From IMG/VR virus record IMGVR_UViG_3300021964_000012, positions 62,001-126,000 of that record: 64,000 bases of DNA, one strand, 5' to 3'. Under the pieces are notes generated by a model. That model was given only the letters and a program-made list of their open reading frames with translations, made no database searches and was not told the origin of the DNA. Shown piece by piece: positions 23,355-45,815 of this stretch (positions are counted from its first letter, which is position 1; every line of letters starts with the position of its first letter). The position numbers and the translations under genes were made by a program.

Positions 23355-24290
23355 CTAGGTGCCCCATGCGTTTCCGAAGAGGCTAATGTGTAGTCTGGGT
23401 GTAAACCTCCATCCTCTCTCCATGCAGAGTCTTGCAACTTCTTGGACGTTGAGAACATATTCTTCACTCCTGCCACCCAACGGCATAAGATATACAGGAC
23501 ATTCAATCCCTGCTTGCCTATACTCGTCAACAGCTCGACCAGCTTCATTGATATCAGTTTCATCAGCAACCACAAACTTGAGATACATGTCACTACCGAC
23601 CACAGACTGATAATCACGAGCCACTGCAGGCTTAATAGCAGTCTCCCAAGGTTCTCCTGAAACTGTGAGCTTTGGGGAACAACTCCAAGTAACCTTAAAC
23701 CTCTCTTGAGTGGAGAGATAATCGCCAAAATCTTCATGTAGCATTTGTGTTGTATTAGTTTCAAATGTAACATTTTTCAAGTCCTTCATTTTTGGATGTT
23801 CAAACAATTCAACATACAATCTTTGCCAAGCAAGTAAAGGCTCACCACCTGTCATTATCAAGTGTACGTCTTGCCCATTATCCATTGTCCATTTGCCTTC
23901 TGGCAGTAAACTGATTAAATGTTCAACTACTTCATCAACTGTACGTAGCATGTTGAAGTGTTTAAACTCAGGATAGATACTAGCATATGTATCGCAACCT
24001 GTGTGTATTATTGGCAAGTCGTTGAACTCTTTTGTATTTTTATGTATGCCTGTATCAAGCAAACCTTGTACTTCTTGATTGTGTATTATACCTTGTTTTT
24101 GTTTTTCATCTCGCATGGGTTCTGATCTATCCAAACCAAAGTTCATGCATCTAAAGTTACAACCAAATGTACGTAAGAACACACTAGGTACTCCTACAAA
24201 TTTACCTTCGCCTTGCACACTGTAAAAGGCTTCACTGTATCGTAATTTTGCTTGTTTGTTGGTGGCAACTGTTTGTTCTTCTACTACCAT
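23355..24290 (-). CDS. queE: 7-carboxy-7-deazaguanine synthase (radical SAM)
   Basis: EAFYSVQGEG, FLRTFGCNFRC-(long insert)-CDT, TGGEP, ETN, SPK, RLH. Confidence 0.9.
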   Translation of the reverse strand: MVVEEQTVATNKQAKLRYSEAFYSVQGEGKFVGVPSVFLRTFGCNFRCMNFGLDRSEPMRDEKQKQGIIHNQEVQGLLDTGIHKNTKEFNDLPIIHTGCDTYASIYPEFKHFNMLRTVDEVVEHLISLLPEGKWTMDNGQDVHLIMTGGEPLLAWQRLYVELFEHPKMKDLKNVTFETNTTQMLHEDFGDYLSTQERFKVTWSCSPKLTVSGEPWETAIKPAVARDYQSVVGSDMYLKFVVADETDINEAGRAVDEYRQAGIECPVYLMPLGGRSEEYVLNVQEVARLCMERGWRFTPRLHISLFGNAWGT

Positions 24291-24493: not shown

Positions 24494-24714
24494 TTAGATT
24501 CAGTTACTTTCTGTAGTTGAAGTTCTTTGCCAACTATTTCACGCAGTTTTAATCCGTTACCCATTGGGTCCATGTTTTCATAACGTGTTAAACAATCACG
24601 TGCATTAATATCTTTCCAGATTTCCTTACGTCCATCTGGCCAAGATATTTCGTACCTACGTAAACTTTTGTCCCAGCTCTTAGGCGAGCCGTCTTTCATA
24701 TAGGTAACAGTCAT
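24490..24714 (-). CDS. hypothetical protein
   Basis: 74-aa ORF coupled on both sides. Confidence 0.6.
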   Translation of the reverse strand: MTVTYMKDGSPKSWDKSLRRYEISWPDGRKEIWKDINARDCLTRYENMDPMGNGLKLREIVGKELQLQKVTESK

Positions 24715-25304
24715 TACCGCATAACCTCTTCATTTGGATTCCAACGACTCCACCATTCTTCCCATGGAAAAACAATCCAACTTGGATCATCTACTTTGTT
24801 GATTTCTTCTGCGGCATAGCTAACTTTCAGAACTGCGTCGCTTGCACTGTTATCATATAATACTGCAAAACGTGTTGATTCATTCCATATAGTATTCCAA
24901 ACATAGAGTAAATTATCATCGATCTTTTTATTGATTGTGTTTTCCCAATCTTGTTTGATCCAATTAATAGTTGCACCTGAATCATTTATATCATCTACAA
25001 TTAGGACTTTCTTACGTTGCCCAACGTCCCATCTTGCACCACTGTGTCGACCGTCATTCATGCCAAATGCTATTTCTGCTAATTTCTCATTGCTTTCACA
25101 TGGTACATGTTTGCCATCACGTAATCTTACATCAAGTGTATACATAGTAACATCTAAATATTGACTTAACAAGTTGCTTAGTGTTAGTCCGCCTCTTGTG
25201 ATACCCACGATAAAGTCAGGCTTCCATGAATCTTTCTGCATTTGACGCAATATTTCTTGAGTTTGTCTTTGTACATCATGCCAGGTTACATAGACTTTTT
25301 TCAT
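24714..25304 (-). CDS. type I purine phosphoribosyltransferase (Gpt/Hpt-like)
   Basis: IVGITRGG, VLIVDDINDSGAT (PRPP-binding), WIVFPWE. Confidence 0.88.
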   Translation of the reverse strand: MKKVYVTWHDVQRQTQEILRQMQKDSWKPDFIVGITRGGLTLSNLLSQYLDVTMYTLDVRLRDGKHVPCESNEKLAEIAFGMNDGRHSGARWDVGQRKKVLIVDDINDSGATINWIKQDWENTINKKIDDNLLYVWNTIWNESTRFAVLYDNSASDAVLKVSYAAEEINKVDDPSWIVFPWEEWWSRWNPNEEVMR

Positions 25305-26151: not shown

Positions 26152-26738
26152 TATCTTTTCTCTACTATTTTATCAACCAATCCATAATCTAAGGCTTGTT
26201 CTGCACTCATAAATTTGTCACGATCCATGTCTCGATCAAAATCTTCGTAGGTTTTGCCTTTGGTGTTATGTTTTACATAAAGTTTTGTGAGTGTTTCTTT
26301 GATGTTTTGTATTTCTTTATAACGTATTTCAATGTCACTGGCTTGTCCGCTGGCGCCACCACTTGGTTGATGTATCATGTGTCTTGCATTAGGCAACATC
26401 AAACGTTTTCCTGGTGCACCTGCATTGGCTAAAAAACTACCCATTGAACAGGCCTGTCCCATCACAACAGTGGTTACATCTGGTTTGATGAATTGCATGG
26501 TATCGTATATGCTCATGCCAGCAGTGACTACGCCACCTGGTGAATTAATATAGAACAATATATCTTTGTCAGGATCTTCTGATTCTAAGAATAACATTTG
26601 TGCTACAATTAAATTTGCACTGTAGTCTTCAACCGTTCCATTAAGCATTACAATTCGATCTTTTAACAACCTACTGTAGATATCATATGCACGTTCACCT
26701 TTAGAGGTGGTTTCTACCACCATTGGTACCAAAGCCAT
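26151..26738 (-). CDS. clpP: ATP-dependent Clp protease proteolytic subunit
   Basis: [33 protein letters not shown] triad motifs. Start refined to MALVPMV. Confidence 0.96.
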
Positions 26739-27193
26739 TATGTTGTGATCCTTTTGTATATTGCACTGTTTGCACCATGTTCCATACACTCAACTGAATG
26801 TACCCAACATCTGCCATCTGTTTGTTCTTTAATTAGTTTATCTGCAAAATCATATGCATGTTTGGCAAACATCTCTGCACCAACACCATCAAGTATTGTT
26901 AGTTGTGCTAGTCCTGCATCTTCTAATGTGTGAAAGTAGTGAAGTTTGTCATCATTCTCATCAAGCACAACCTTGTGATCAAATGTATCTTCTAACCACT
27001 GTTTCAATGGCTTCAATCCACCAAAGTCCACTGCCCAGTTTTTATTGTCAAGTTTGCTACAAGCAAATACAAACTTGAATCCTAAACTGTAGCCATGTAA
27101 GAATCTACAATGAGAATGATCTGCATGCGGTTGTCTAAACACTGCACTAAGTCCAATGTTGTGTCCATAAGTTTTTGTACTATAGTATGCCAT
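26738..27193 (-). CDS. queD: 6-carboxytetrahydropterin synthase
   Basis: C-x-x-LHGYS, [21 protein letters not shown]. Confidence 0.9.
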
Positions 27194-29547: not shown

Positions 29548-29549
29548 TT

Positions 29550-30669: not shown

Positions 30670-31356
30670 TTATCGTGGACTATATTCTTGTTGCAACTTG
30701 ATATTGTCCATGAACTCCTTTTTTGTGCCAGAGTCAGTTTTGAATGCACCTTTAAGTACAGTGGTCTGTGTAAGACTACTGTGTGCCATTATGCCTCTGT
30801 TTTCACAACAACCATGTGTTGCTTGTATGTAAACACCAACATCTTCACTGTCAGTTGCTCTCATTATTTCTCTGGCTATGTCCATTGCAAGTTCTTCCTG
30901 CAATGTACCTCTTCTTGCACACCATTGTGCAATTCTTGTGTATTTGCTTAATCCTATTAGATGATCTGCGGCTAGTATACCAATATAAGCAGTTCCAGTA
31001 ACTGGTTGATGATGATGCGAACACATGCTCTTCAATTCGCTACGAACCACCAACATACCATCATATCTATCTTCAAGATGATTGGGAAAACTGGTTGCGT
31101 TTGGCATAGGACTGTATCTGCCTGCCATCAATTCATTGATATACATCTTAGCTAAACGTTTACCTGTGCCATGTGAGTTTGGATCATTTTCTCTGTCAAT
31201 GATCAAACTGTCAAGCACACCATTGAACTTTTCAGTAAGTTCTTCTATCAATGCTTCTTTGTCGCCGTCATGCAGATAACCACTGATGTTGTCACCAGCC
31301 CAATATCTTTTTTTGGCTTTTTTAATTCTTTGTGTAATTATATTGGAAATTGTCAT
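30670..31356 (-). CDS. folE: GTP cyclohydrolase I
   Basis: SMCSHHHQP, GLSK..R, R..LQE, HGCCENRG. Confidence 0.95.
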   Translation of the reverse strand: MTISNIITQRIKKAKKRYWAGDNISGYLHDGDKEALIEELTEKFNGVLDSLIIDRENDPNSHGTGKRLAKMYINELMAGRYSPMPNATSFPNHLEDRYDGMLVVRSELKSMCSHHHQPVTGTAYIGILAADHLIGLSKYTRIAQWCARRGTLQEELAMDIAREIMRATDSEDVGVYIQATHGCCENRGIMAHSSLTQTTVLKGAFKTDSGTKKEFMDNIKLQQEYSPR

Positions 31357-33544: not shown

Positions 33545-34732
33545 TTAAATTTTTACAACTTGATACTTTGCACCAGCAACATGATCTCTATACCTGTTAC
33601 CTGTACGTAACCATTGTTCACCTTTGCCCTGCATGATGTCAACCACCCTATCAACAGTACCATCAGTATGATCGCTTATCAAGCCCATGTTGTGATGTGC
33701 TTCTTTTAGTAGGTTTCCTAGTTTAACTTCGACATCATCAATGCTCCAAGGCACATACAATCTGTTTGGATCGTTTGCAAATGTTTCTGGAAAACTTCTG
33801 TATGCTGGATACAGTACATTACAACCTAGTGCATCTGCTTCACTGACAGTGTTGCTTACCCAATCTTGTAAAGCACAGTTAAACAATACTCTACTATCAT
33901 TTAGTATTTTGTAGTATTCATGCTTTTGCAAGTTTTCGTGTATTTCTAGTATGCCACGTGCTTCAAGTTCTCTTGCACGAGTTATATATTTTTCATTGTT
34001 ACTACGCAATGGTCCACCTTGTAGTATTGCAAACGTTTGAGAACCTGGATGTTGTTCGCTATAACGTTCTACTAGATCCATAAAGAAGTCTGGTTGCTTC
34101 TCTTGATCAAATCTTGCACTAAAGCAAATCCTATTAGCACGTTCATGAAAAGGCTTTATCCGTTCGCCCAACCTTTCCTGAACTTCTGCTTTGCCAAATG
34201 CCAAGCCTGAGATATTGTATATAGGTGACTCCCAGCCAGCAATCTTCATGTGTGCTACCATTTCTTCATTGGTAGCCAAGACTGTGGCAAACTCACATAC
34301 CATCTTCTCATATAGGCCCATCCACTTGGACATTCCCCACACATGTACGAAATCATCTGGATCAATTGCTTGGGCAAGACAGCGTACATATACTCGGGGT
34401 CTTTGGGTACTTGGAATCTGATCCATAATATATGGCAGACTCTCTATACCCGGCTGAAACATATCTTCAAAGTAAATAACATCTTCTCCACCGCATTCAC
34501 CATTACGCATCATTTGCACTAGATTCATAATCTGGCTCATACCAAAATAACTGCGTCCATGTGCATCTAATACTTGTCCAACTGATATACTTTTTGAGTC
34601 ATCAATTGTTGTACCTGGAACATACACAACATCAAGTCCTCTACGATCAAACACACGTCGATTCCATTCAGTTAATTGTAATGTATATCGAGCTTCATAA
34701 GATTCAAGACCCATGTAGAATAGTTTACGCAT
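33545..34732 (-). CDS. GT-B (GT4-like) glycosyltransferase
   Basis: RFDQEKQP, LQDWVSNTVSEA..GC..LYP.YRSFPE (E-x7-E-like). Start refined to MRKLFYM with GGAG RBS. Confidence 0.75.
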   Translation of the reverse strand: MRKLFYMGLESYEARYTLQLTEWNRRVFDRRGLDVVYVPGTTIDDSKSISVGQVLDAHGRSYFGMSQIMNLVQMMRNGECGGEDVIYFEDMFQPGIESLPYIMDQIPSTQRPRVYVRCLAQAIDPDDFVHVWGMSKWMGLYEKMVCEFATVLATNEEMVAHMKIAGWESPIYNISGLAFGKAEVQERLGERIKPFHERANRICFSARFDQEKQPDFFMDLVERYSEQHPGSQTFAILQGGPLRSNNEKYITRARELEARGILEIHENLQKHEYYKILNDSRVLFNCALQDWVSNTVSEADALGCNVLYPAYRSFPETFANDPNRLYVPWSIDDVEVKLGNLLKEAHHNMGLISDHTDGTVDRVVDIMQGKGEQWLRTGNRYRDHVAGAKYQVVKI

Positions 34733-34757
34733 TTTTACTCCTTTGAAATATGTACTA

Positions 34758-34786
34758 ATAATAACAACCAATTAAATGGTTGTCAA
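34758..34786 (-). promoter_or_regulatory. sigma70-type promoter
   Basis: TTGACA-17 nt-TATTAT with TG. Confidence 0.65.
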
Positions 34787-35392
34787 CTATTTAGGTAACC
34801 GAACTAGGTGTGTTGTTTCTTTGTGCCATTTGTACCATATCTCTTTTACATAATCTCTATAGTATACAACGTCTATGATGTTACAAATTTTTTCTACTTC
34901 TGCACTAAATGTAGCATAAGCAATTAGAGCAGTAAAATTTATTGTATATGTTGATTCTTGTACTAAACTATGATACATTTTTATTTGTGAGTTTAAGAAA
35001 TCATTATGATCCAAGTCGGGCCGTTTTGTTTCGGCAAGTTTTTTAATTGTTTCCATGTCATCCGGAGCAATAAAAATTAGGTTTTGCCACTGATAATCAC
35101 CAGTCCAAAGATTGAGTTTACCATCTATAAATTGATCAGGATGAAGTCTATGTATCAATTTTAGAGAATTGGTTTCATGCACAAAAAAGTCGCCTTTGCC
35201 TTTTTGATATCCAACTTCTAATTCAGTTTCAGTTTTAAGCCAGTTTTTACTATTCCAATTATTGTATTCTTGAAATTTGCTGTTTAAAGTAGTAGCCTTA
35301 CCAAAAGGCACTGTAGATAGATCCAATGATAAACATCTTGTTAGCAAGTTTCCGGCACTTCCTGGAATATATACTATACATGCAGTAAGCAT
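34787..35392 (-). CDS. hypothetical protein, sulfotransferase-like N-terminal loop
   Basis: YIPGSAGNLL...HRLHP. Confidence 0.45.
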   Translation of the reverse strand: MLTACIVYIPGSAGNLLTRCLSLDLSTVPFGKATTLNSKFQEYNNWNSKNWLKTETELEVGYQKGKGDFFVHETNSLKLIHRLHPDQFIDGKLNLWTGDYQWQNLIFIAPDDMETIKKLAETKRPDLDHNDFLNSQIKMYHSLVQESTYTINFTALIAYATFSAEVEKICNIIDVVYYRDYVKEIWYKWHKETTHLVRLPK

Positions 35393-35667
35393 TAGAAGTC
35401 AACATCTCTTCCGTTTATATTGTAAGTACCGTGTGTGAAACCTCTATCCATCTTTTCGATTTCGGTCATGTCGTCACTATCAATCCTGCGATTAGGATCT
35501 CGTTTCATTTGTGCTAGACGGTCTTTTGCATTGTCTTTGCCACACACAGAGCATACGCCTGATGCACCACCGCAACTGCCGCTTACACGACGGCCTCTTA
35601 GGAGGCCTATACTCATTGCCAATACTGTAATTAATAAGATGACCAAGCATATTAAAAATGTCTCCAT
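35392..35667 (-). CDS. NqrM-like (Na+-NQR maturation, DUF539) membrane protein
   Basis: TM helix ending LAMSIG, then R-x-x-GSCGG...CSVC. Confidence 0.65.
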   Translation of the reverse strand: METFLICLVILLITVLAMSIGLLRGRRVSGSCGGASGVCSVCGKDNAKDRLAQMKRDPNRRIDSDDMTEIEKMDRGFTHGTYNINGRDVDF

Positions 35668-36717
35668 TTAGTATTCGTAATGTATATTTCTATCGCCTTG
35701 TAATATTAACATAGGACGGTCGTAATTGCTATTGTTAATTGAACAATGTGAAAAATATTGTTGATTGAAAAATGCTCCATCATTGATTGGCACTAAGCCT
35801 GCTGGCCCTAGTTTATACTTGTTTTTGTCTGCTTCTTTTTCTTGCAGATTAAGTAAAAATATTACTGGACCTTTAGTATAATACATTGCTTCTTTTATGC
35901 CATATGGATCTTGAATATATGCATCATCAATATGTGGTTTAAAACTTGCGCCTGCTGGTAATGTTTGTAAATTTATATCTAACATACGAGTAAAACCAAT
36001 CTGTTCACATAATTTTCGTAGTTCTTTGTTTTGAATTTGATCAAGTTCTGTAAACGGTAAGTGTGCATGCTCAGACATTACCTTACGATGCAATATGCGT
36101 GTCTTTCCATCTTGTTTTCCAAACTGTGAAATATCTTTATCAATTACCAATTTACAGTCTAATTCTATATCATGTATAATTTTTTGTCTGTCAATGTTTG
36201 AAATCTTCTCTGGTGGAACTATATCATAAGGTTCAGCCAATGATCCTTTTCTCCACCACCCAGGACCATGCCCTGCTCTATAATAACTTCTGATGCGTTC
36301 TGGCCAGATTGGATCGATATCAATAGGCTTGTCAACTGTATGCAAATAAAGAGGAAATTTGTCTAACCCATAATCTCCGTTTCTAATATTCTGTTGCATA
36401 AATATTTCTAGATATCCAAATTCTGTATGTAACCATATACTATAATAACCTTCTGTCCATACTGCATTTGCAGGTTGAAACCTTTTTCCTGTGCTAGACT
36501 CTGTAAAAAACCCTGTATAAAAATAATGTCGAAGTGTTTCACCATTTATTTTCATGTCACTAAGCTCTATTTTTTCTCCGGTGTATTCTAGTATAAAATT
36601 ATACCAACCAGGAGGTATATCAAATGATTCGTGATTTGTAAACTGTATTACTTCGTCTTTTAGGTTTTTTAGATAATATTTTCCTAAAGGTTTATCAGCA
36701 AAAATTTCAATCTTCAT
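35668..36717 (-). CDS. two-domain protein with C-terminal cupin 2OG-Fe(II)-type oxygenase
   Basis: PHIDD...HCSIN...R in the C-terminal half. Confidence 0.6.
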   Translation of the reverse strand: MKIEIFADKPLGKYYLKNLKDEVIQFTNHESFDIPPGWYNFILEYTGEKIELSDMKINGETLRHYFYTGFFTESSTGKRFQPANAVWTEGYYSIWLHTEFGYLEIFMQQNIRNGDYGLDKFPLYLHTVDKPIDIDPIWPERIRSYYRAGHGPGWWRKGSLAEPYDIVPPEKISNIDRQKIIHDIELDCKLVIDKDISQFGKQDGKTRILHRKVMSEHAHLPFTELDQIQNKELRKLCEQIGFTRMLDINLQTLPAGASFKPHIDDAYIQDPYGIKEAMYYTKGPVIFLLNLQEKEADKNKYKLGPAGLVPINDGAFFNQQYFSHCSINNSNYDRPMLILQGDRNIHYEY

Positions 36718-36718: not shown

Positions 36719-37162
36719 TTAGTAACTTACGCAACAACCATTTTCTCCATCTTCACTGACTTCAATGGTTACGGCCCTTCCTGGGTATTTATTAGCTATT
36801 TGCAAATACAAATCATCCGCTATCATCTCACAGGACTTGTAGTCCAGCTCAAGCACTCCAGTGTCACCGTGTCCTTCACTTCCGTCCGGTACCATATCAT
36901 ACAATCGTTGTAGCCAACGTTTGAATTGTATAAATTCAATTTCTCTGTCGTCATGGAATACTTCGATTTGCACCCTGAAATGGAAAATATGACGATGAGG
37001 ATAACCAAGAAACGATACATCATCCCAACCTCCTGTTGCTAGTTTTGGATCATCCAATGCCGCTGGATACTTGTGAATACCTTCACGTTTAAAGGTTACC
37101 CAAATCTGCCTGGAGGCTTTGTCTTTTGCATTTTCAACGGCTTCACGTTCTGCTTGTATCAT
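36719..37162 (-). CDS. QueD-like T-fold protein, probable CDG decarboxylase (DpdL-like)
   Basis: EGIHKYP, LGYPHRHIFHF, DREIEF, SCEMIA, VSEDGENG. A second QueD-fold protein lacking the QueD C-x-x-x-HGH/Y motif. Confidence 0.7.
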   Translation of the reverse strand: MIQAEREAVENAKDKASRQIWVTFKREGIHKYPAALDDPKLATGGWDDVSFLGYPHRHIFHFRVQIEVFHDDREIEFIQFKRWLQRLYDMVPDGSEGHGDTGVLELDYKSCEMIADDLYLQIANKYPGRAVTIEVSEDGENGCCVSY

Positions 37163-37947
37163 ATTAACTCCTTGTAAAGTAAAGGATACCTTTTTTCTAT
37201 GGTATCTAATACGTTATCGCATATCATTTTGTGTCCTTCAGGACTAGGATGCCCAGGATGTAATCCTTTGTCATCATCAATATGATTGTACACTAAATCA
37301 CTCCATGGGTCAAGTACCAATTGCCACTCGTCAAATTTTGTTTTAAAAAAATTAAAAGCCGCAACGTATTCATGTGTTGAATAGTCATCAATATCCGCAC
37401 CTGTACTTCTTACCCAAGCATTTGGATCCTTGTCTATGTCTTGATATGCAGTTGCAAGATCATACTTAGCATTAGGTGAAGACCAACTGTTAAAAAATAT
37501 TACAGGACAGTTGAAATAGTTAGTAGCAAGTTCGTATATCTGCCATATTTGATTGAACATTTGGTATATGTATTCAACTTCGTCGTATACATCGTCTACA
37601 AAAAAAGCAAGCAATTTATTTTCATTAGTGAAATCACGATGAAATTTTACATCATTTTTCTTAGCAAATCTATCATTGATTATACCATGTCCTATATTCC
37701 AACTAGAGCCCATCTTACTTGGTAAATGCCAACGTGAATGTACAGTCAATCCTATTAAGATAAGTTTTGGTTTAGAATTTGTATGATATAATTTATAAAG
37801 GTTACTTAGAATTCTACTATTACTTCCACAACCAGCAGCCTGATTTATAACCTTACATTTAACACGTGATTGCAATACACAAGGCCAACTGTAATCAGGA
37901 TCTATATTACTACGTTGTGACCAAGAATCACCATTGACATAAATCAT
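37159..37947 (-). CDS. SGNH/GDSL-like hydrolase or acyltransferase
   Basis: MIYVNGDSW, NQAAGCGSN, T..SR, GHPSPEGH. Confidence 0.7.
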   Translation of the reverse strand: MIYVNGDSWSQRSNIDPDYSWPCVLQSRVKCKVINQAAGCGSNSRILSNLYKLYHTNSKPKLILIGLTVHSRWHLPSKMGSSWNIGHGIINDRFAKKNDVKFHRDFTNENKLLAFFVDDVYDEVEYIYQMFNQIWQIYELATNYFNCPVIFFNSWSSPNAKYDLATAYQDIDKDPNAWVRSTGADIDDYSTHEYVAAFNFFKTKFDEWQLVLDPWSDLVYNHIDDDKGLHPGHPSPEGHKMICDNVLDTIEKRYPLLYKELI

Positions 37948-38450
37948 TTTATAATCTCATCTTTAGAATAATCTGTCCAAGGAGTAAACTTTCGTCTATC
38001 CATAAGTTTGTGTAAGCTGTGTGTCCATACACCAGGATTTGTTGCATCAAAGTCGATGTCATCAATCTTTAACATTGTATTGTAGTTCCAGTGTTTGATA
38101 AAAGGGATGCCAACTCTCAACTGTGGAATAAAAGTATTGTATTCGCAGTAACCTTCTTCATGGAATGCTTCAAACTGCGATACAGGTATATCCAGTGTAC
38201 ACCATACATTGTCTCTAAGAAAAGGCATGATCATAAACGACCATTCATAATGTTCATCATCATCTTTGGGATCATATGTATGATTGGCACCAAAGAATAT
38301 GTGCTTACACCCATGCTTTTCATATGCTTCTTTGACTGCAACTACATCTTGTATACCAACAACAAACAGTGTCTTCATACCAAACGCAGGAGTGTGTTCA
38401 ACTTCAGTGCCTATAAACCATTGTACGTTTTCGTGATCAGGACGTTCCAT
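37944..38450 (-). CDS. unknown protein immediately after dpdA
   Basis: FIGTEVEHTPA.G.KTLFVVG, HIFFGANH, TLD, KIDD.DF.ATNPGVW. Start refined to MERPDH. Confidence 0.75.
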   Translation of the reverse strand: MERPDHENVQWFIGTEVEHTPAFGMKTLFVVGIQDVVAVKEAYEKHGCKHIFFGANHTYDPKDDDEHYEWSFMIMPFLRDNVWCTLDIPVSQFEAFHEEGYCEYNTFIPQLRVGIPFIKHWNYNTMLKIDDIDFDATNPGVWTHSLHKLMDRRKFTPWTDYSKDEIIK

Positions 38451-38469: not shown

Positions 38470-38498
38470 ATTATACAACAACTTGTACTGTATGTCAA
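38470..38498 (-). promoter_or_regulatory. consensus sigma70 promoter
   Basis: TTGACA-17 nt-TATAAT. Confidence 0.75.
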
Positions 38499-39958
38499 TC
38501 AAATAGTGCATTAAACTGACTTGCACTGTTTACTATCTTCTTGCCAGTAAAACCTCTTGTACCTTTAATACTATCCCAAAACTTACTGTTGTCTTCGATA
38601 ATTTGCATGCTTTTGTTATAATCTCGTGCTTCAAATACTCTTTCAACAACATCACGGAACAACACACGTTCAAATGTTTCGTGTACTAGCATTCCAGGAA
38701 GGATACCTTCATCATATCTGACATTAGCATCTTGTACTGCTCTTATGTGTTGCCATACATTGTGTCCCATTAGCAGTGCATAACTGAAACTATCCCAACT
38801 TGTCTTACCTTCTTTACCAATCTTATTTAGGTCGCCGGGTGCATAGTAACAAATATCTCCAATAGTTAGTCTTGAGCTTATCGGTGAATCTTCAAATTTT
38901 TCATGTATACCATCACGTAGCACTACGTCACGAAAACTGTCTGTGCCATGTGCATATTTCTTATCATCAGCAGTGGCTTCCATCATGTAACTCCACTTGC
39001 CTCTATCTTCAGTACGCAGGTTGGTATACACTTGTCCGTTAGCAGTTGCAAGGAATGGCGACGCACAATCAAAACTAATAGTAAAGTTTGCATTCGCATG
39101 ACGACGTACACTACGTTGTATATCAGTTAACAAACATGCCCACTCTAGTTTGCTAGTGCCTAAAAAGTGCATCCAATCATGGTGTCCTTTTTCTAGCAGT
39201 CCTTCATGTATAAGTGTAACCAAACGTTTCAATACCAAGTGTACATCACACATGTTCTGTCCACCCATACCCCAACCATCAAATGGCCTGTCATACTTGT
39301 CTGAACAAAACTTTTTCATAGTATCGTACCATTGATCCGCTTCAGTGTGATTTGAACCTTGTAGCACGTTTAGTATCTTCAGCTCGCCACTTCTACTCTT
39401 CATCCAAAATTCATTGTTAAACAAGGTAGCATCAACTGCATCTTGATAACTTTTTATTCCACATGCTTCACTTGCTTCTTTATCCAAGTAAGTCCATGTA
39501 GGAATATCCATGGTCATACCATGTGTTGCTATGCCCATTTGCCATGCAATAACCTGTTCACGTTTCTTCTCACAGGCTTTATCTTTAGGATCAGCCCATG
39601 CTCCTGGCCACACACCTTTGGCAATTTGGAATCCACCTGAGTCAGCAAGCATGATAGTATCTGCTTCTCTATTACGCACCATATCTTCTTTTGGCACTGT
39701 GATACTTAGATCCATATTGGCATGTCCAGCTGAATACAAACTATACTTGTAAGGAAACAAACTTTCTTTGCTGTTCAGCCAATTCATAGCCTCCATATTA
39801 GGAATGCCCTTGGGCAACCTATTACCAATAATCTTGTTTTTATCACCTGCAGGAAAACGTTCCTTACCAATGTAACCAGCATAAAAACTGCTGATTGCAG
39901 GCAAGAATACTGCATAGTCTTTTTGTTTTAGTGTTAGATTATCTTGTTTAGTTTCCAT
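38495..39958 (-). CDS. TGT-fold guanine transglycosylase (DpdA-like)
   Basis: LADSGGFQ, MDIP, VLQG, GWGMGG, HFLG, ISFDCAS: ordered TGT catalytic motifs; no C-x-C-x-x-C zinc site. Confidence 0.8.
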   Translation of the reverse strand: METKQDNLTLKQKDYAVFLPAISSFYAGYIGKERFPAGDKNKIIGNRLPKGIPNMEAMNWLNSKESLFPYKYSLYSAGHANMDLSITVPKEDMVRNREADTIMLADSGGFQIAKGVWPGAWADPKDKACEKKREQVIAWQMGIATHGMTMDIPTWTYLDKEASEACGIKSYQDAVDATLFNNEFWMKSRSGELKILNVLQGSNHTEADQWYDTMKKFCSDKYDRPFDGWGMGGQNMCDVHLVLKRLVTLIHEGLLEKGHHDWMHFLGTSKLEWACLLTDIQRSVRRHANANFTISFDCASPFLATANGQVYTNLRTEDRGKWSYMMEATADDKKYAHGTDSFRDVVLRDGIHEKFEDSPISSRLTIGDICYYAPGDLNKIGKEGKTSWDSFSYALLMGHNVWQHIRAVQDANVRYDEGILPGMLVHETFERVLFRDVVERVFEARDYNKSMQIIEDNSKFWDSIKGTRGFTGKKIVNSASQFNALFD

Positions 39959-40607
39959 AAAATTCCACACGTTCTATTAGATCAAAATCTTCCTGATAAA
40001 AATATTTAATTTTACTCATTAAAAAACTATCTTGACTAACAAGATCTCTATAATATTTTATCAATTCTAACTTTTTGGTATCTTCAGTGACGTTTTCCTT
40101 TTTTTCATATTTGTTAGGTATAGTAAGTTTTTTGTTAGATGCCCACGAGAAAAAATTTTCTGTAAACTGTTCGTCTAAATAAAACCAAGTTGTAGAAGAT
40201 TCCTCTAATTTTCTTATAAATTTGGATACAAATCTATTTTGTGGTTTGGTATGAATATCCAATCCGTCTGCACCATTTGATCCTATTTTTGCAGGTAAAC
40301 CATTCGAGAGTACTGTTTCCTTAGCATTTATAAAAAATTCTAATACTTGCCTTTCGTTCCGTTCACGGCCTGGAAAAGACGCTAGATATTGTGCAACACC
40401 AGATGCCCAACGTTCTATAGGATCTCGAAGAACACAAACCTTATTAGTATGCGATGATTCTGTGCGTTTTAGTTCTCTTCCTAGGTTTCTCTCTAACCAA
40501 CTGCTGGCATTTTTTGGAATACAAATCACCATGTGTGAATTTTTGACATCAGACATTTCATCATCATAATATTCGTTTATAAAAATATACTCTGGATCAG
40601 CCCTCAT
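39948..40607 (-). CDS. sulfotransferase family 2-like protein
   Basis: IPKNASS, LRDPIERWAS, HTKPQ, NVT, YQEDF. Confidence 0.7.
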   Translation of the reverse strand: MRADPEYIFINEYYDDEMSDVKNSHMVICIPKNASSWLERNLGRELKRTESSHTNKVCVLRDPIERWASGVAQYLASFPGRERNERQVLEFFINAKETVLSNGLPAKIGSNGADGLDIHTKPQNRFVSKFIRKLEESSTTWFYLDEQFTENFFSWASNKKLTIPNKYEKKENVTEDTKKLELIKYYRDLVSQDSFLMSKIKYFYQEDFDLIERVEFYGN

Positions 40608-41339
40608 CTATTTACTTTGTGCAGGAAGTATGTAATCATAAACTGCAATACCTGAATCAACTGTGATCTTTGTTGCTCCACTGTCGCTTATTCTCACAGT
40701 TTTGTCACCGGTTAAGTTCATGATTGCTATAAACTGTTGTACTGGCCAACTCCAACTTTTAGTTAATTTTCCGCCAACGTCATGTTGGAACACAAAGTCA
40801 CCTGCGTGTGTGCTATGATCACCAAACAAGAACTTTAAATGTCCATCTTCAGTTTTGGTTTGAAATGTTGTCTCTTCAGCATTTGCTTGGGCTTGCATTT
40901 TCAATCTCATGATACTTGCAGTTGTTGGCTCAAACTCAATATCCCATGGCACATCTTTCATCTTAACGCCTTTGAGCTTTTCATTTACAATTTCACTGAC
41001 CATAAATCTATAGTCATTCTTGAAGTCACCAGCGGCATTCTTAAAGTGCAATCCAACTGGAGCTTGTTCGCCATTGCGTTCTTGTCTCTTCACAGTTATT
41101 TCTGCATTTTCTCTATACTCGCCGATGTTAAGCAGTATCTTTAGTTTTGCTAGATTAGGCATGCCAAATGTACCAATATAGTCTGCAACTGGTGCGGCAA
41201 ACTTTGCTTGTAATACAACACTCTTATCCTCTGCAAGTCCGTCAACTGCGGTTGCAGTATCTGTTCCTGTTATCTTAATCAAATCAATACAACCTAAGTC
41301 ATAGCTATGTTCAACTAAGTCTAGTAGATAATCTCTCAT
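40608..41339 (-). CDS. DNA polymerase sliding clamp (gp45-like)
   Basis: About 243 aa, FGMPNL.KL, ends YDYILPA; lies two genes from the polymerase. Confidence 0.65.
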   Translation of the reverse strand: MRDYLLDLVEHSYDLGCIDLIKITGTDTATAVDGLAEDKSVVLQAKFAAPVADYIGTFGMPNLAKLKILLNIGEYRENAEITVKRQERNGEQAPVGLHFKNAAGDFKNDYRFMVSEIVNEKLKGVKMKDVPWDIEFEPTTASIMRLKMQAQANAEETTFQTKTEDGHLKFLFGDHSTHAGDFVFQHDVGGKLTKSWSWPVQQFIAIMNLTGDKTVRISDSGATKITVDSGIAVYDYILPAQSK

Positions 41340-42361
41340 TCGTTTTCTCCATTCCATAATCGATTAATTGCACCGAGGTTTTGTCCACCTCTAAGGCTTG
41401 TAAGTTTTCCAGGTTTACGTATTTCAAGCCAGCTTACACACCAATTTGTAAATTGGTTTTCGCCATCATAACTAGACACAATCTCATACCCAGTTGTTTT
41501 GCAGAACTCTTTAAGTGTGTAACCATTTGTGTAAGTGTAGTGCATTTCATCAACTTTGTCAATCGCTTTTGGAAAACTACAATTATTATAGGTAAAAACT
41601 ATTGCTCCACCTGGCTTTAAAAGGTCAAATGCACTCCTAATATACTTTTCTATTACATCTTGTGTCTTAAAATTAAACCAATTGAATGATACAATTAAAC
41701 CAAGTTGACTTTTTGGCAACATGTGCATGGGATTATCAGTAGTGTCGTCAAATTCATAATATCTTAGTCTCTTTTGATACAATTTACTCCATAGTTTTTT
41801 AGTTTCAATGAACCTGCCTTCAACATTATCTGCAAGGTACAAAGGATCAAGAGCAACAAGTTGTTTGGTATAATATCCTTTCAATGGTCCAATTTCTAAA
41901 CCAGGCCATTTGAAATCTACATATTTTTTTATAGTTCCAACAAATTGTTTTTCTATTTCTGATGGTTCTTCTCCTGAGATAGGTGGTGTAAAAAATAATT
42001 CGTGGTAATCAGCTTGAAAATTCTTGTGTTCTGGTGGTTGAACAAGATCCGCTTTCTGTATCTCAATGCTTTTTTCGTGATAGGTTTTTTCTAAATTTAA
42101 AATCATTTGGTCCAGTTCTAATATGAATCTATTTAGATAGGTGTATAGATCAGTGATATTTTTTAGAATTTCTCTTTGAGTATTGTGCATACTTTCTTTG
42201 AGATTATCAATTTCGATATTTTCTAAATTTACTGATGCATTGAAATTTTCTAATTCTTGAAAAATTGGTCTTTCAATTTTTTGATAATCAAGACTGTCTC
42301 TATTAGTAGATATAATACGATATAACGTATTGCGATAGTTTATTAGGTCTTTAAATTGCAT
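41336..42361 (-). CDS. class I SAM-dependent methyltransferase with N-terminal coiled coil
   Basis: GLEIGP motif I, LLKPGG, FTYN. Confidence 0.65.
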   Translation of the reverse strand: MQFKDLINYRNTLYRIISTNRDSLDYQKIERPIFQELENFNASVNLENIEIDNLKESMHNTQREILKNITDLYTYLNRFILELDQMILNLEKTYHEKSIEIQKADLVQPPEHKNFQADYHELFFTPPISGEEPSEIEKQFVGTIKKYVDFKWPGLEIGPLKGYYTKQLVALDPLYLADNVEGRFIETKKLWSKLYQKRLRYYEFDDTTDNPMHMLPKSQLGLIVSFNWFNFKTQDVIEKYIRSAFDLLKPGGAIVFTYNNCSFPKAIDKVDEMHYTYTNGYTLKEFCKTTGYEIVSSYDGENQFTNWCVSWLEIRKPGKLTSLRGGQNLGAINRLWNGENE

Positions 42362-45021
42362 TATTCAAACTCAAATAGTGTGTTAAATGTGTTGGTGGTA
42401 TCTGTTTCGCTTGCTAGATCCCAGTCAAGAACACCAAGCAAATTGCTTATTTTTTGATCCACAACTGTTGCTTCCATCAGGGCATTATCAAAAGGTAGTT
42501 CTTTGAACCATTGTGGCAAGTGCATCTCATCTGTTGGATAACCAATTGATGTCCAGTTAAGTGGATTGGATTTTAGTTTGCAAACAATAGTTTTCATTCC
42601 GTCTACAATACTTTGACTGTAGTTGTCTGAATTCATCTTCTTCATGTTATTCCAGTTAAGTGCAGCTCTAACATGTCCAGGCATGTTTGCACGACCTTCT
42701 TGTTCTTCACGTTTGCCATACATTGTGAGATTATTAACACGTTTAGGAGATCCTTTTTCCCAAGCAGGGCGTTCTTTGAAGTCAATCTTAAATGCTTTGA
42801 TCATGTCGATTATTTCCTGACGTTCAGCACCAGCAAGAACTCTTGTTAATAGTGTCATCAAGAAGTCCTGTATCACCTTAGGAGTATCACTGCGTTTCAA
42901 GTCCAAACCCATTGCTTTAATCTTACCTTGTTTTCCTGCAACATCAAGACGTTTACCTTCGTTGTCAAAGATATTAATTGCATAACGTTTCTTTGTGATG
43001 AACAAGCCTCTATCAGCAATACTTTCTCTACCACCTTTGATAATAAGTCCGTTTTCTCTTGGCACATGAAATGCCTGTTCCATAAATGCAGGCCAACTGT
43101 CGTTCAGTTGATCACTTATAGCATCATAAAGTTGTATACAAATTTCTTTGTTCCATTCCATGTTGCCTGCATCAATGTCTTTCTTAAGTATTGGATATGC
43201 ACTGAAATATACACTATCTGTATCACCATATATTACTGCATCACCAACATGATCATACTTTCCAGTGATTGCTTCATTAACAAATGCATCCATATGATAT
43301 GCAATACTTCTGCCAGTGAGTGTGGTTGATTGTCCTATGCGTTTGTCAAAGAATCTACAACCTGGATTGAGAATAGCACCATATAAACTGTTCAAGTTAA
43401 TCTTCTTAACCAACTGTCTCTTGTCCAAAAATTCTATTTCTGCTGGGTCAGTTGCTTGTCTAAGATTTGCTTGTATCTCTTGTCTCTCTCTATACCAACG
43501 TGCAAGTAAGCCAGGAACAATACCTTCTTTTTCATATGTAAAAATAGTACCATTTGCACTCAGCATCCAAGGTTGGTTGCTATCAAAGATCAGTTTCCAA
43601 ATCTCTGCGGCACTGTGTACACTTTCTTCGCCGTTTTCCCAGTCAATGGTAATCTCTGTGCCACGTTCTTGTTTCATAACCGCAGTGTATTCTAGTGTGC
43701 CAAACAATCCTTCCCACGCCATAGCAAATGAACTTTTGTTGTTCATCTTGTTCTTGATATAGTTGTCGGTCATTATAGGTCGCAGTTGTCCTACAATGGT
43801 TTCGCCGGCCATGTTCAGAGCTCTAATAGCACTTGGATACAAACTGTTGATGTCTATAGCACCTATCCATTCATGTATACCTTTTTTAGGATATGCAACA
43901 TATGCACCTGCCGCCGCAGTATCTTCATCAGTGAGCCTTTGACGTCTGTTTGGAACAACTAAGCCTTGTTCGTGTGCTTCGTTAATGATTGCTTGTTCTG
44001 TAACTGCTACTGCACCCATTGTTGTTTGTAGTAGCACAGTATTTGCATGTGCTAGTTCATTTGCAAGTGCTAGGAAACGCAGTTTCTTATCCAGTTTATC
44101 TAGCAGTGCAGTATCTTGTCTAGAATACTCTATAAACGTTTCAAAGTTCTGATTGTACAGTTGATCTAATGTGCCTTCATAAGCAGTTTTCTTCTCATCA
44201 AGTTCATGTTCGCCAATGGCATCCAAACTATAACTGTGACGCTCTTCGTATGTGTATTTTCTGTACAGTTGCATATAGTCCATATGTACTCTGCCAATGG
44301 TATCAAATGTGATATTCTCTGATCCAAAACGTTCAAATGTACGTTTCTTTGGCAGTTGACTCCATAGACAAAAACGTCTAGTGTCATCTTTGCTCAGTAT
44401 CCTTGCAGTTCTATTAACAAGATAAGGTATATCATAACCTTCACTGTTCCAACCACTGATTACATCAGCATCTTCAATTAGGTCTAAAAATGTTGTGAGC
44501 AAGTCTTCTTCACGTTCAAGCAATATTGTGTTCGGAAACTTACTGCATATCTCTTGAGCTGTCTCCCAGCTCAGTGTCTTGGGAGGAAGTACTAGTGTTA
44601 TTAATTGTTCCATCCATTGTAAGTATACACTTATAGCAGTGACTGGATTAAATGGATCGGCAACACTACTGTATCCTCGCACAGGATCAAAATCAGTTTC
44701 AATATCAAAAAAAGCAGTTTGCAATGTTGGTGCGTTTTGATCTTTGTAGTTCTCTTCAAAACATCTAAACACAGGATTGATATCAGATTCAAATATATCT
44801 TTACCTGATTGCATTCTAAGTTCCTTACGAAACTCTTTGTTGTTACGTGTTGAAAATCTACTTACAGGTTTACCATAGATACTTTTGTATTTGCCTCTAG
44901 GATCTGCATAATAGAAACAATACGATGCAGGATACTCACGGTACTCTCTTTTGCCATCTACACGTTCTACAACGTGTATGCGATCTTTTTCTCTGTCAAA
45001 TAGTGCATCAACATAGCTCAT
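42361..45021 (-). CDS. family B DNA polymerase
   Basis: FFDIET, GWNSEGYD, DINSLYPS, KINLNSLYG, YGDTDS, KKRY. Start refined to MSYVDA. Confidence 0.97.
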   Translation of the reverse strand: MSYVDALFDREKDRIHVVERVDGKREYREYPASYCFYYADPRGKYKSIYGKPVSRFSTRNNKEFRKELRMQSGKDIFESDINPVFRCFEENYKDQNAPTLQTAFFDIETDFDPVRGYSSVADPFNPVTAISVYLQWMEQLITLVLPPKTLSWETAQEICSKFPNTILLEREEDLLTTFLDLIEDADVISGWNSEGYDIPYLVNRTARILSKDDTRRFCLWSQLPKKRTFERFGSENITFDTIGRVHMDYMQLYRKYTYEERHSYSLDAIGEHELDEKKTAYEGTLDQLYNQNFETFIEYSRQDTALLDKLDKKLRFLALANELAHANTVLLQTTMGAVAVTEQAIINEAHEQGLVVPNRRQRLTDEDTAAAGAYVAYPKKGIHEWIGAIDINSLYPSAIRALNMAGETIVGQLRPIMTDNYIKNKMNNKSSFAMAWEGLFGTLEYTAVMKQERGTEITIDWENGEESVHSAAEIWKLIFDSNQPWMLSANGTIFTYEKEGIVPGLLARWYRERQEIQANLRQATDPAEIEFLDKRQLVKKINLNSLYGAILNPGCRFFDKRIGQSTTLTGRSIAYHMDAFVNEAITGKYDHVGDAVIYGDTDSVYFSAYPILKKDIDAGNMEWNKEICIQLYDAISDQLNDSWPAFMEQAFHVPRENGLIIKGGRESIADRGLFITKKRYAINIFDNEGKRLDVAGKQGKIKAMGLDLKRSDTPKVIQDFLMTLLTRVLAGAERQEIIDMIKAFKIDFKERPAWEKGSPKRVNNLTMYGKREEQEGRANMPGHVRAALNWNNMKKMNSDNYSQSIVDGMKTIVCKLKSNPLNWTSIGYPTDEMHLPQWFKELPFDNALMEATVVDQKISNLLGVLDWDLASETDTTNTFNTLFEFE

Positions 45022-45815
45022 TATTTGTTTAGTCCATTCGTACAGTAAGGTATTAGTATTTCTTGTGTCCAAGCAAGATCTCCATCAGGTGAAGGATGGA
45101 AGTCGTCATCAGATATAAGCATTCTTTTTACACAAAAACTATATATGTCTTGCATTGGGTCCATAATAGCAGTATAAGTCTCTTTGATTGAATCTGGTAA
45201 AAATTTTACAATATTAAAATTTTCACTGCGATTAGGAACAGATGGATCTAAAAAATCAACAAATATTGACCGATAACCACTAGCATCAAGATATTTTTTC
45301 AATTGTATTTTCCAAATTGCATTTTCAACCGCTCTTGATTCAAAACTCTTGTATTTGTGTATGTCTCGATAACCCCACCAATTTAATGTTATATCGCCTT
45401 CACGACTTGCACCTCCAGTTGATCCATGACACACATTATCTGTATAATTATAAACAAAATTTGCATTTTTGTCAACTGCGTCGGCTGAAAAAATTGCATC
45501 TTCACGATCATGTCCAGACCACATAACTACTACCATAGTCTGATCTGGTGATAATTTAGAGTTTTCTAATCCCCATACTATACTTTTTGAAATGAAATTA
45601 TTGCCAGCACCAGGCATAGCACAAGAATAGACTTCATTGAATCCTGCAAGATCTCTAAAGTAGTATGGCCAACTAACAGGAACTTGGGTAGGATTAGTGT
45701 AGGTAAAACTACATCCACCTACCACAAGATTTTCAAAACCAAGATCTATAACTTGATCAAATTGTTTTGATACTTTCTGTGTTTGCATAGACTGTATATG
45801 GATAACACGATCCAT
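45021..45815 (-). CDS. SGNH/GDSL-like hydrolase or acyltransferase
   Basis: GGCSFT, AMPGAGN, MWSGHDRED, DDFHPS. Confidence 0.7.
   Translation of the reverse strand: MDRVIHIQSMQTQKVSKQFDQVIDLGFENLVVGGCSFTYTNPTQVPVSWPYYFRDLAGFNEVYSCAMPGAGNNFISKSIVWGLENSKLSPDQTMVVVMWSGHDREDAIFSADAVDKNANFVYNYTDNVCHGSTGGASREGDITLNWWGYRDIHKYKSFESRAVENAIWKIQLKKYLDASGYRSIFVDFLDPSVPNRSENFNIVKFLPDSIKETYTAIMDPMQDIYSFCVKRMLISDDDFHPSPDGDLAWTQEILIPYCTNGLNK

What the first reader, a model, noticed from the sequence alone, without database searches (positions are those of the whole stretch)
37944..38450. Unknown gene next to dpdA with its own consensus promoter: candidate new Dpd component
Seen: a 168-aa protein with enzyme-like motifs (EVEHTP, HIFFGANH, KIDD.DF...NPGVW) directly after the transglycosylase and before dpdL, driven by a perfect TTGACA-17-TATAAT promoter. 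Inference: a DpdA partner or a missing tailoring step of the modification.
Basis: inference. Interest (0 to 1): 0.65.

Follow-up and report, generated by a model that had tools for sequence, protein, structure and literature searches.

The report
Unknown enzyme-like gene in deazaguanine module
A 168-residue protein with no recognisable family or fold is almost always encoded between the DNA base-swapping enzyme DpdA and the predicted decarboxylase DpdL in a very large group of aquatic giant phages, which makes it a strong, untested candidate for a missing part of the pathway that replaces guanine in phage DNA with 7-deazaguanine.

Summary
The ORF (37944-38450, minus strand, 168 aa), its motifs and the perfect TTGACA-17-TATAAT promoter are real.

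**Neighbours.** The upstream 491-aa gene folds as a tRNA-guanine transglycosylase, so it is DpdA-like. dpdL lies downstream, but in this genome a 262-aa SGNH-like ORF sits between the two. The promoter heads an operon of overlapping genes, not X alone.

**The protein ("X").**
- It has no Pfam, PHROG, NCBIfam or PDB sequence match.
- The family is large: 5088 word-search hits and 588 clusters at 50% identity. It is essentially phage-only.

**Linkage.** In 132 metagenomic loci with enough flank:
- dpdL lies downstream in 103/103.
- dpdA lies upstream in 104/109.
- A glycosyltransferase follows in 83/84.

X also lies inside the deazaguanine cluster of Acidovorax phage ACP17, which has a different DpdA subfamily. 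It co-occurs with dpdA and dpdL in PA5oct-like phages. Ten other DpdL lineages lack it, including phiST, whose DNA is known to carry dDG. A long-DpdA phage that uses QueC/QueF also lacks it.

**Verdict.** X is a new accessory component of the QueC-less, DpdL-type pathway. Its reaction is unknown. The DpdA co-fold gave no verdict.

The parts
37944..38450 (-). Gene X: 168-aa protein of an uncharacterised, phage-restricted family (P0001)
38470..38498 (-). Perfect sigma-70 consensus promoter (TTGACA, 17 nt, TATAAT). Its -35 hexamer overlaps the dpdA stop codon.
   Evidence: A promoter of at least 10/12 lies within 150 nt upstream of X in 42/124 related loci (15 perfect), against 0/117 coding control windows. 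The transcription start was not measured.
38495..39970 (-). Long DpdA-like DNA transglycosylase (491 aa), directly upstream of X
   Evidence: DSGGFQ and FDCASP motifs. hhalign against ACP17 ASD50403: probability 79.6%, E 1.5e-5. The AF2 model matches TGT structures. No Pfam TGT hit by HMMER.
37159..37947 (-). 262-aa SGNH-like ORF inserted between X and dpdL. It overlaps both by 4 nt.
   Evidence: N-terminal GDSWS and C-terminal LHPGHPSPEGH read from the sequence. No Pfam hit. Absent from the 80 closest related loci.
36719..37162 (-). dpdL (147 aa): QueD paralogue, predicted 7-carboxy-7-deazaguanine decarboxylase
   Evidence: LxxxHRHxF motif as LGYPHRHIF (motif defined in PMC10516641). 52-53% identical to ACP17 DpdL and 33% to phiST DpdL. 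phrog_17812.
33545..34771 (-). GT1-family glycosyltransferase conserved in the module
   Evidence: Pfam Glycos_transf_1, E 1.7e-5. Homologue of ACP17 ASD50404. Present in 83/84 related loci with enough flank.
40608..41357 (-). 249-aa protein (phrog_12062) conserved between PolB and dpdA
   Evidence: Its Phosso homologue is annotated as a sliding clamp; I did not verify this.
42361..45072 (-). Family B DNA polymerase heading the module
   Evidence: Pfam DNA_pol_B and exo domain.
30670..31356 (-). FolE (GTP cyclohydrolase I), first step of 7-deazaguanine synthesis
   Evidence: Pfam PF01227, E 5.5e-39.
26738..27193 (-). QueD (CPH4 synthase)
   Evidence: Pfam PTPS, E 9.6e-14. 39% identical to ACP17 QueD.
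23355..24290 (-). QueE (7-carboxy-7-deazaguanine synthase) with an insertion
   Evidence: NCBIfam QueE models match at E 2.6e-11 to 8e-8, all below their curated cut-offs. The sequence has the QGEG...GCNFRC motif.
24714..25304 (-). Phosphoribosyltransferase, a possible guanine salvage enzyme, recurrent in the module
   Evidence: Pfam Pribosyltran. Found in 29 of the first 80 loci. Also in Paride and BUCT-ZZ01.

Best explanation
Gene X encodes a small alpha/beta protein that belongs functionally to the QueC-less, DpdL-type 7-deazaguanine DNA-modification module of this phage.

**The pathway around it.**
- FolE, QueD and QueE make 7-carboxy-7-deazaguanine (CDG).
- DpdL is predicted to convert CDG to 7-deazaguanine.
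- The long DpdA swaps the base into DNA.

**Expression.** X is transcribed from a host-type sigma-70 promoter at the head of an operon that also holds dpdL. In about half of its relatives it is translationally coupled to dpdL.

**Most likely role (inferred, not shown).** X acts on the free 7-deazapurine base together with DpdL, between the QueE product and the DpdA substrate. It could help or carry out the decarboxylation, or hand the base over. The conserved residues would form the binding or catalytic site: E16, E18, D87, D130 and D131, plus H50, K128, N138 and W142. By the model's secondary structure, most of these lie at or just after the C-terminal ends of strands.

**Shown:** the gene, its conservation, its linkage, and the identity of its neighbours.
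**Inferred:** that it is an enzyme, and which step it serves.
For: **Linkage across the family**
- In 132 metagenomic loci from several X subclades (35-94% identity): dpdL downstream in 103/103, dpdA upstream in 104/109, GT in 83/84, FolE in 62/71 loci with enough flank.
- The X stop and the dpdL start are within 60 nt in 62/126 loci and overlap in 46.

**Independent genome backgrounds**
- ACP17 has FolE-X-DpdA3-GT-DpdL-QueE.
- PA5oct-like phages keep X although it lies about 27 kb from dpdA/dpdL.
- PA5oct DNA resists enzymes with G in their sites (PMC12191111).

**Phage restriction and natural comparison**
- All 13 isolate records with X also have dpdL.
- Only 9 hits in 185,579 prokaryotic species genomes, all MAG contigs; the seven with enough flank carry the same module.
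- Vibrio phage 2.275.O shares PolB-p249-long DpdA but uses QueC/QueF. It lacks both dpdL and X.

**Pathway and protein**
- The genome has no QueC, so its pathway stops at CDG.
- Polar residues are nearly invariant and the model is confident.
- Cui et al. could not obtain dDG from ACP17 dpdL plus dpdA in E. coli and suggested that other enzymes are needed (PMC10516641). The X gene between FolE and dpdA was not part of that test. Its annotated start in ACP17 cuts off the conserved N-terminus.
Against: - No activity, ligand or partner has been shown.
- There is no recognisable fold or family, so 'enzyme' rests on conservation alone.
- Most of the 132 loci share one ancestral syntenic module, so they are not independent. 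Truly independent contexts number about three.
- X is dispensable for dDG as such. phiST, whose DNA contains dDG, lacks X. So do Phosso, RHph_I1_18, BUDD, BCSR5, Ahp1, D479, Bakedbeans, BUCT-ZZ01 and MA9V-3 by profile search, with the positive control working.
- Among isolates X is found only in lineages that also carry the GT, so a link to the GT step fits equally well.
- Two short contigs of an ACP17-near subclade show unrecognised neighbours.
Confidence: 0.45

Rival explanations
1. X is a tailoring enzyme that acts after the base is in DNA, together with the conserved GT1 glycosyltransferase. The two would build a larger, still unidentified 7-deazaguanine hypermodification.
For: - The GT is in 83/84 loci. 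It is present in every isolate lineage with X, and in none of the six DpdL lineages without a nearby GT.
- In this window and in 28 of the 80 closest loci, sugar-nucleotide genes (epimerase/dehydratase, DegT fragment) follow the GT.
- In one X subclade the gene order is GT-X-dpdL, and X carries a Lys-rich tail ending in KKPKAKK-like runs that could bind DNA.
Against: - Phosso, BUDD, BCSR5 and BUCT-ZZ01 have GT plus dpdL without X.
- No DNA-binding or sugar-handling fold was recognised.
- No glycosylated deazaguanine is known in DNA.
- X is coupled to dpdL far more often than to the GT.
Confidence: 0.2
2. X is a non-catalytic or regulatory subunit of DpdA: a DNA-handling or processivity partner, as DpdB is for bacterial DpdA.
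For: - X is directly downstream of dpdA here (44-nt gap) and within 60 nt of it in 31/117 loci.
- DpdA3 and DpdA4 enzymes could not be made to work alone in E. coli (PMC10516641).
Against: - X accompanies two very different DpdA subfamilies, the long form and ACP17's DpdA3, which match only at hhalign probability 79.6%.
- X is absent from long-DpdA phages Vibrio 2.275.O and Phosso.
- It lies 27 kb from dpdA in PA5oct-like phages.
- Nearly invariant acidic and basic residues look more like a small-molecule site.
Confidence: 0.1
3. X has nothing to do with deazaguanine. It would be a replication-module or nucleotide-metabolism gene (or an anti-defence gene) that travels with PolB and is linked to dpdA/dpdL only by inherited synteny.
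For: - The whole block PolB-p249-dpdA-X-dpdL is one conserved module in one large phage group, so most loci are not independent.
- In PA5oct-like phages X sits among unrelated unknown genes.
Against: - In ACP17 X lies inside the cluster, between FolE and DpdA3, in a different genome type.
- Vibrio 2.275.O shares PolB-p249-long DpdA and lacks X together with dpdL.
- No X was found in any phage record without dpdL among 50,697 records.
Confidence: 0.15

Closest known systems
Phage 7-deazaguanine DNA-modification systems with DpdA3 and DpdL (Cellulophaga phage phiST type; Cui et al. 2023, PMC10516641)
   Same: FolE, QueD and QueE without QueC. A DpdL with the LxxxHRHxF motif. A TGT-fold DNA transglycosylase. 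The cluster lies next to the DNA polymerase gene.
   Different: - The transglycosylase here is a long (480-570 aa) form that Pfam TGT does not detect.
- The module adds X and a GT1 glycosyltransferase.
- phiST has neither. A non-homologous P-loop protein sits between its dpdL and dpdA3.
QueE, 7-carboxy-7-deazaguanine synthase (radical SAM partial barrel)
   Same: It is the only pathway-related fold that recurs among the weak structural matches.
- ESM Atlas QueE clusters: TM 0.59-0.60 over 133-134 residues.
   Different: - X has no CxxxCxxC or Cx14CxxC cluster motif; its cysteines (C48, C84, C102) are not among the conserved columns.
- Profile-profile comparison with 41 phage QueE sequences gives probability about 1%.
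STAS domain (RsbS, SpoIIAA, SLC26 C-terminal domain)
   Different: - It covers only the N-terminal two thirds.
- 4-11% identity, and no Pfam STAS hit in any of 100 members.
- X's conserved C-terminal KIDD...NPGVW part has no counterpart.
DpdB/DpdC of the bacterial Dpd system
   Same: They are accessory proteins encoded beside DpdA and needed for insertion (DpdB) or conversion of the inserted base (DpdC). This is from established knowledge and was not tested here.
   Different: X matches no Pfam, NCBIfam or PADLOC-independent profile. It is far smaller than DpdB or DpdC and is confined to phages.

Membership tests
DpdA / tRNA-guanine transglycosylase superfamily (the 491-aa neighbour, not X) | TGT (beta/alpha)8 fold | tested here: met
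   AF2 model pLDDT 86.7. Foldseek against PDB gives 177 matches at E<=1e-3, best 5.2e-7 with probability 1.00; all 50 rows listed are tRNA-guanine or archaeosine transglycosylases.
DpdA / tRNA-guanine transglycosylase superfamily (the 491-aa neighbour, not X) | Conserved Asp-bearing motifs (DSGGFQ; FDC..P) and a match to the Pfam TGT model | tested here: inconclusive
   Both motifs are present and invariant in 19 homologues. PF01702 finds nothing in the genome. hhalign against ACP17 DpdA3 gives probability 79.6%. DNA transglycosylase activity cannot be tested here.
DpdL (predicted CDG decarboxylase; the 147-aa gene downstream) | QueD-like protein with LxxxHRHxF in place of CxxxHGH, in a phage with FolE/QueD/QueE but no QueC | tested here: met
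   LGYPHRHIF motif. Homology to ACP17 and phiST DpdL. FolE, QueD and QueE are present. QueC is absent; the one weak PP-loop hit is NadE.
QueE / radical SAM (considered for X) | Three-cysteine [4Fe-4S] motif and sequence-profile similarity to QueE | tested here: not met
   No cysteine motif in X. hhalign of X against single QueE and against a QueE profile gives probability 0.4-1.2%. Only weak fold resemblance remains.
STAS domain (considered for X) | Significant structural or profile match over the domain | tested here: inconclusive
Any described protein family (X) | A hit above threshold in Pfam, PHROGs, NCBIfam, PDB sequences, or solved or predicted folds | tested here: not met
   Searches gave none. 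The only clear fold match is its own ACP17 homologue in BFVD (E 1.6e-7).
Phage Dpd module component (X) | Consistent co-occurrence and neighbourhood with dpdA, dpdL and CDG-synthesis genes in independent lineages | tested here: met
   About three independent contexts: the aquatic jumbo-phage group, the PA5oct group and ACP17.
Phage Dpd module component (X) | Loss or omission changes the DNA modification | not testable with these tools
   This needs genetics or reconstitution with LC-MS/MS.

The most novel reading that the evidence does not exclude
X is a new-fold enzyme that is the missing activity of the QueC-less pathway in these phages. It would be either the true (or obligatory co-) decarboxylase of 7-carboxy-7-deazaguanine, or the enzyme that prepares the base for the conserved glycosyltransferase. 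In the second case a globally abundant group of aquatic jumbo phages, together with PA5oct-like and ACP17-like phages, would carry a guanine hypermodification that has not yet been described.
Probability: 0.2. Interest if true: 0.8.

Novelty: new variant of a known kind. Interest (0 to 1): 0.62.

Why it matters
- **An open biochemical question.** How 2'-deoxy-7-deazaguanine is made and inserted is unresolved. The only published attempt to rebuild the DpdL/DpdA3 step failed, and its authors suspected missing enzymes. It included ACP17, which carries this gene unused between FolE and dpdA.
- **A concrete candidate.** X is conserved, has culturable hosts (Pseudomonas aeruginosa, Acidovorax citrulli) and can be added to the reconstitution or deleted from the phage.
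- **Scale.** The family has thousands of members in estuarine, marine and freshwater viromes. Its function bears on how a large part of aquatic jumbo phages escape restriction.
- **Practical use.** It also bears on reading their DNA by sequencing, and possibly on new nucleic-acid enzymology.

Tried and rejected
**Family and fold searches for X: no usable hit**
- Pfam, PHROGs and NCBIfam on X gave nothing. Pfam on all 100 family members at E<=5 gave only scattered single hits.
- A profile of the family against PDB sequences returned only chance hits to picornavirus VP2.
- Foldseek PDB, VIA wide, VIA second look, BFVD and ESM Atlas gave no match above the noise level except X's own ACP17 homologue.
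- The protein-atlas feature search returned only noise such as PagL and porins at 0.88-0.90.

**Homology ideas tested and dropped**
- 'X is a cysteine-less QueE derivative': hhalign probability about 1%.
- X related to the TGT barrel of DpdA: hhalign probability 0.2%.
- phiST gp041 (P-loop) and the Phosso 'glycosylase', which occupy the same slot, are not homologous to X.

**Co-fold of DpdA with X**
- The tool returned no answer (score 0.00 against a mark of 0.32; controls were not run). It is not evidence either way.

**Searches that fell short**
- C-terminal extensions of fused family members are low-complexity Lys-rich tails. They match nothing in this genome, and Pfam gives only one short partial hit, to the T4 portal family, in one member.
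- Contexts for distant X clades via the look-up of encoding contigs came back as contigs of about 1 kb, which are uninformative.
- The search for related loci failed with the full alignment and with P0134, P0208 and the Vibrio 2.275.O DpdA.
- The PA5oct omics paper holds no gene-level data for the homologue EST35_0364 in the text available.
- RNA-library contigs overlap X and the dpdA-X junction at 90-95% identity. They cannot show transcription, strand or start.

- No other genetic code was needed.
- Read laying was given 4001 letters.

Full report
**Where the window lies.** The window is bases 62001-126000 of a 328,292-bp virus record with direct terminal repeats, rated complete. Near-identical DNA is held by at least 11 estuary and marine metagenome runs. 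Nearly all long ORFs are on the minus strand.

**The observation.**
- The ATG start is right. M1 and R3 are invariant in homologues. The longer TTG-started frame would run over the promoter.
- A perfect TTGACA-17-TATAAT lies at 38498..38470. The window has five perfect copies, all on the coding strand, against 0.16 expected by chance. These are a real promoter class read by the host polymerase. The related phage PA5oct depends on host RNA polymerase (PMC7318152).
- X's stop overlaps the start of the next ORF by 4 nt, and that ORF's stop overlaps the dpdL start by 4 nt. The promoter therefore heads an operon.
- A promoter matching at least 10 of 12 positions lies within 150 nt upstream of X in 42 of 124 related loci, 15 of them perfect. 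None of 117 coding control windows has one.

**The neighbours.**
- The 491-aa protein upstream has no Pfam TGT hit. It does carry DSGGFQ and FDCASP.
- It aligns with ACP17's putative DpdA3 at hhalign probability 79.6%.
- It folds with pLDDT 86.7 into a structure whose best PDB matches are tRNA-guanine transglycosylases: 177 matches at E<=1e-3, and every listed row is one. It is a long DpdA-like enzyme.
- dpdL is the 147-aa gene at 36719-37162. It has the LxxxHRHxF signature of Cui et al. (PMC10516641), is 52-53% identical to ACP17 DpdL and 33% to phiST DpdL.
- Between X and dpdL this genome alone has a 262-aa ORF with SGNH-like end motifs.
- FolE, QueD and a QueE with an insertion are in the window. 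QueC is absent; the only weak PP-loop hit is NadE. The pathway therefore ends at 7-carboxy-7-deazaguanine (CDG) and is of the DpdL type.

**What X is.**
- X matches no model in Pfam, PHROGs or NCBIfam, alone or across 100 family members. It matches nothing in PDB sequences.
- The family is very large: 5088 proteins in the word search, all unnamed, and 588 clusters at 50% identity.
- G14, E16, E18, T27, H50, G54, K128, D131, N138, G140, W142, T156, W158 and Y161 are invariant or nearly so across 100 members.
- The AlphaFold model is very confident (pLDDT 95.3). Its order is beta-beta-alpha-beta-alpha-beta-alpha-beta-beta-beta plus short helices. By the secondary-structure ranges, most conserved polar residues lie at or just after the C-terminal ends of strands. 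That is where alpha/beta enzymes usually place their active sites. This last point is inference.

**Where X occurs.** I sampled 121 IMG/VR loci from three X subclades, two loci from public assemblies and nine MAG contigs. I searched their six-frame ORFs with iterated profiles seeded by the window's proteins.
- Every subclade shows the same module: PolB, p249, long DpdA, X, DpdL, GT, FolE, QueE, sometimes QueD.
- Counting only loci with enough flank: dpdL downstream in 103/103, dpdA upstream in 104/109, GT in 83/84, FolE in 62/71.
- X and dpdL are within 60 nt in 62/126 loci and overlap in 46. dpdA and X are within 60 nt in 31/117.
- Among 185,579 prokaryotic species genomes only nine contigs carry X. 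All are MAG contigs; the seven with enough flank show this same module, and two are too short to tell. X is therefore a phage gene.

**Isolate phages.** Among 50,697 phage records, X is found in 13: 11 PA5oct-like Pseudomonas jumbo phages and Acidovorax phage ACP17, which is filed twice. All 13 also carry dpdL.
- *ACP17.* Its genome type and DpdA subfamily are different. The order is FolE, X, DpdA3, GT, DpdL, QueE. Its annotated X start (ASD50402, 132 aa) cuts off the conserved FFIGDEVEHT motif. The open frame gives 161 aa.
- *PA5oct-like phages.* DpdA, GT, DpdL and QueE lie next to PolB and p249, as in the window. X lies about 27 kb away among unknown genes. PA5oct DNA resists several enzymes whose sites contain G, and deazaguanine genes have been noted in it (PMC12191111).

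**Limits of the association.**
- A profile of the family finds X in ACP17 and Paride, which serves as the positive control.
- It does not find X in phiST, Phosso, RHph_I1_18, BUDD, BCSR5, Ahp1, D479, Bakedbeans, BUCT-ZZ01 or MA9V-3, all of which have dpdL.
- phiST DNA is known to contain dDG in place of all G (PMC10516641). X is therefore not needed for dDG in general.
- Among isolates X occurs only where the GT also accompanies dpdL. However, four GT-plus-dpdL lineages lack it.
- Vibrio phage 2.275.O shares PolB, p249 and the long DpdA but uses QueC, QueF and a Gat domain. It has neither dpdL nor X. This one natural comparison ties X to the dpdL branch rather than to the long DpdA or the replication genes.
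- Different, non-homologous small genes occupy the slot beside dpdL in other phages: a P-loop protein in phiST and an HhH 'glycosylase' in Phosso.

**Interpretation.**
- The best-supported reading is that X is an accessory, probably enzymatic, component of the DpdL-type deazaguanine module. I think it most likely works with DpdL on the free base. The grounds are the tight coupling to dpdL, the absence of both genes from the QueC/QueF relative, and the failed dpdL+dpdA reconstitution for ACP17, where X was left out.
- A post-insertion role with the GT is the main rival.
- A DpdA subunit role is less likely, because X goes with two very different DpdA subfamilies and is missing from two long-DpdA phages.
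- The co-fold of DpdA with X returned no verdict and counts neither way.
- Pure hitch-hiking cannot be excluded, because most loci descend from one syntenic module. ACP17 and the Vibrio comparison argue against it.

**Expression.** Contigs from three metatranscriptomic libraries overlap parts of X and the dpdA-X junction at 90-95% identity. These are relatives of this phage, and such contigs do not prove transcription.

**Novelty.** The held literature describes DpdL and DpdA3 in one paper only and nothing on this family. X is a new component, and the DpdA-X-DpdL-GT block is a new variant of the known phage deazaguanine systems.

Noticed in passing
window 33545-34771 (GT), 32014-32985 (epimerase/dehydratase), 31434-32045 (DegT fragment): A GT1-family glycosyltransferase is a conserved part of the deazaguanine module: 83/84 related loci, plus ACP17, PA5oct group, Phosso, BUDD, BCSR5 and BUCT-ZZ01. 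Here and in 28 of the 80 closest loci it is followed by sugar-nucleotide genes. This hints at a sugar-bearing guanine modification that has not been described.
   Followed up: partly
window 37159-37947, 35668-36717, 35392-35667, 34787-35392: Four ORFs are absent from the 80 closest related loci and look like insertions into the module: an SGNH-like one of 262 aa between X and dpdL, and ones of 349, 91 and 201 aa between dpdL and the GT. None has a family hit.
   Followed up: partly
L002 (Acidovorax phage ACP17, KY979132.2) 7956-8438: The X homologue ASD50402 is annotated from an internal Met (132 aa). The open frame starts 87 nt earlier (161 aa) and only then includes the conserved FFIGDEVEHT motif.
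   Followed up: yes
window 17975-18003, 21149-21177, 28663-28690, 38470-38498, 45447-45475 (all minus strand): There are five perfect TTGACA-N16-17-TATAAT promoters, all on the coding strand (0.16 expected). This giant phage probably uses the host sigma-70 polymerase for these transcription units.
   Followed up: partly
window 40608-41357: A 249-aa protein (phrog_12062) always lies between PolB and dpdA in this phage group. Its Phosso homologue is annotated as a sliding clamp. No PDB sequence match was found, so its identity is unverified.
   Followed up: partly
L135 (Sinorhizobium phage Phosso) 9379-9912; L087 (phiST) 8290-8787: The slot beside dpdL holds non-homologous small genes in other phages: an HhH-type 'glycosylase' in Phosso and a P-loop protein in phiST. 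These may be alternative accessory functions.
   Followed up: partly
P0141, P0150, P0151, P0161, P0198, P0206, P0212, P0225, P0227, P0241 (loci L093-L097): One X subclade has low-complexity tails of roughly 100-170 residues. They carry repeated LGLD...LKP and AAEAYAEGA..DPLG motifs and a Lys-rich end. There the gene order is GT-X-dpdL.
   Followed up: partly
L152 (Vibrio phage 2.275.O) 8923-15949: A long DpdA of the same subfamily sits with QueF, a YhhQ-type transporter, QueC, a Gat domain and FolE, without dpdL or X. The long DpdA subfamily therefore serves at least two different deazaguanine pathways.
   Followed up: partly
L154 (Vibrio phage Bakedbeans) 6212-7363; L156 (Chryseobacterium phage MA9V-3) 6494-7375: In these phages the DpdL domain is the C-terminal part of a longer annotated protein (383 and 293 aa), which suggests fusions with an unknown N-terminal domain.
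   Followed up: no
window 20341-21093, 21703-22848, 24714-25304, 26151-26789, 28254-30617, 47262-48329: The same region carries other metabolic genes: NadE, a radical SAM/SPASM protein, a phosphoribosyltransferase (possible guanine salvage), ClpP, HIT, a 2OG-Fe(II) oxygenase, a Bmp/PnrA-like nucleoside-binding protein and a second radical SAM protein.
   Followed up: no
L108, L111, L103: Three related loci have PolB, p249 and X (and dpdL in two of them), but no recognisable dpdA in the roughly 900-1300 nt between p249 and X. dpdA may lie elsewhere in those genomes.
   Followed up: no
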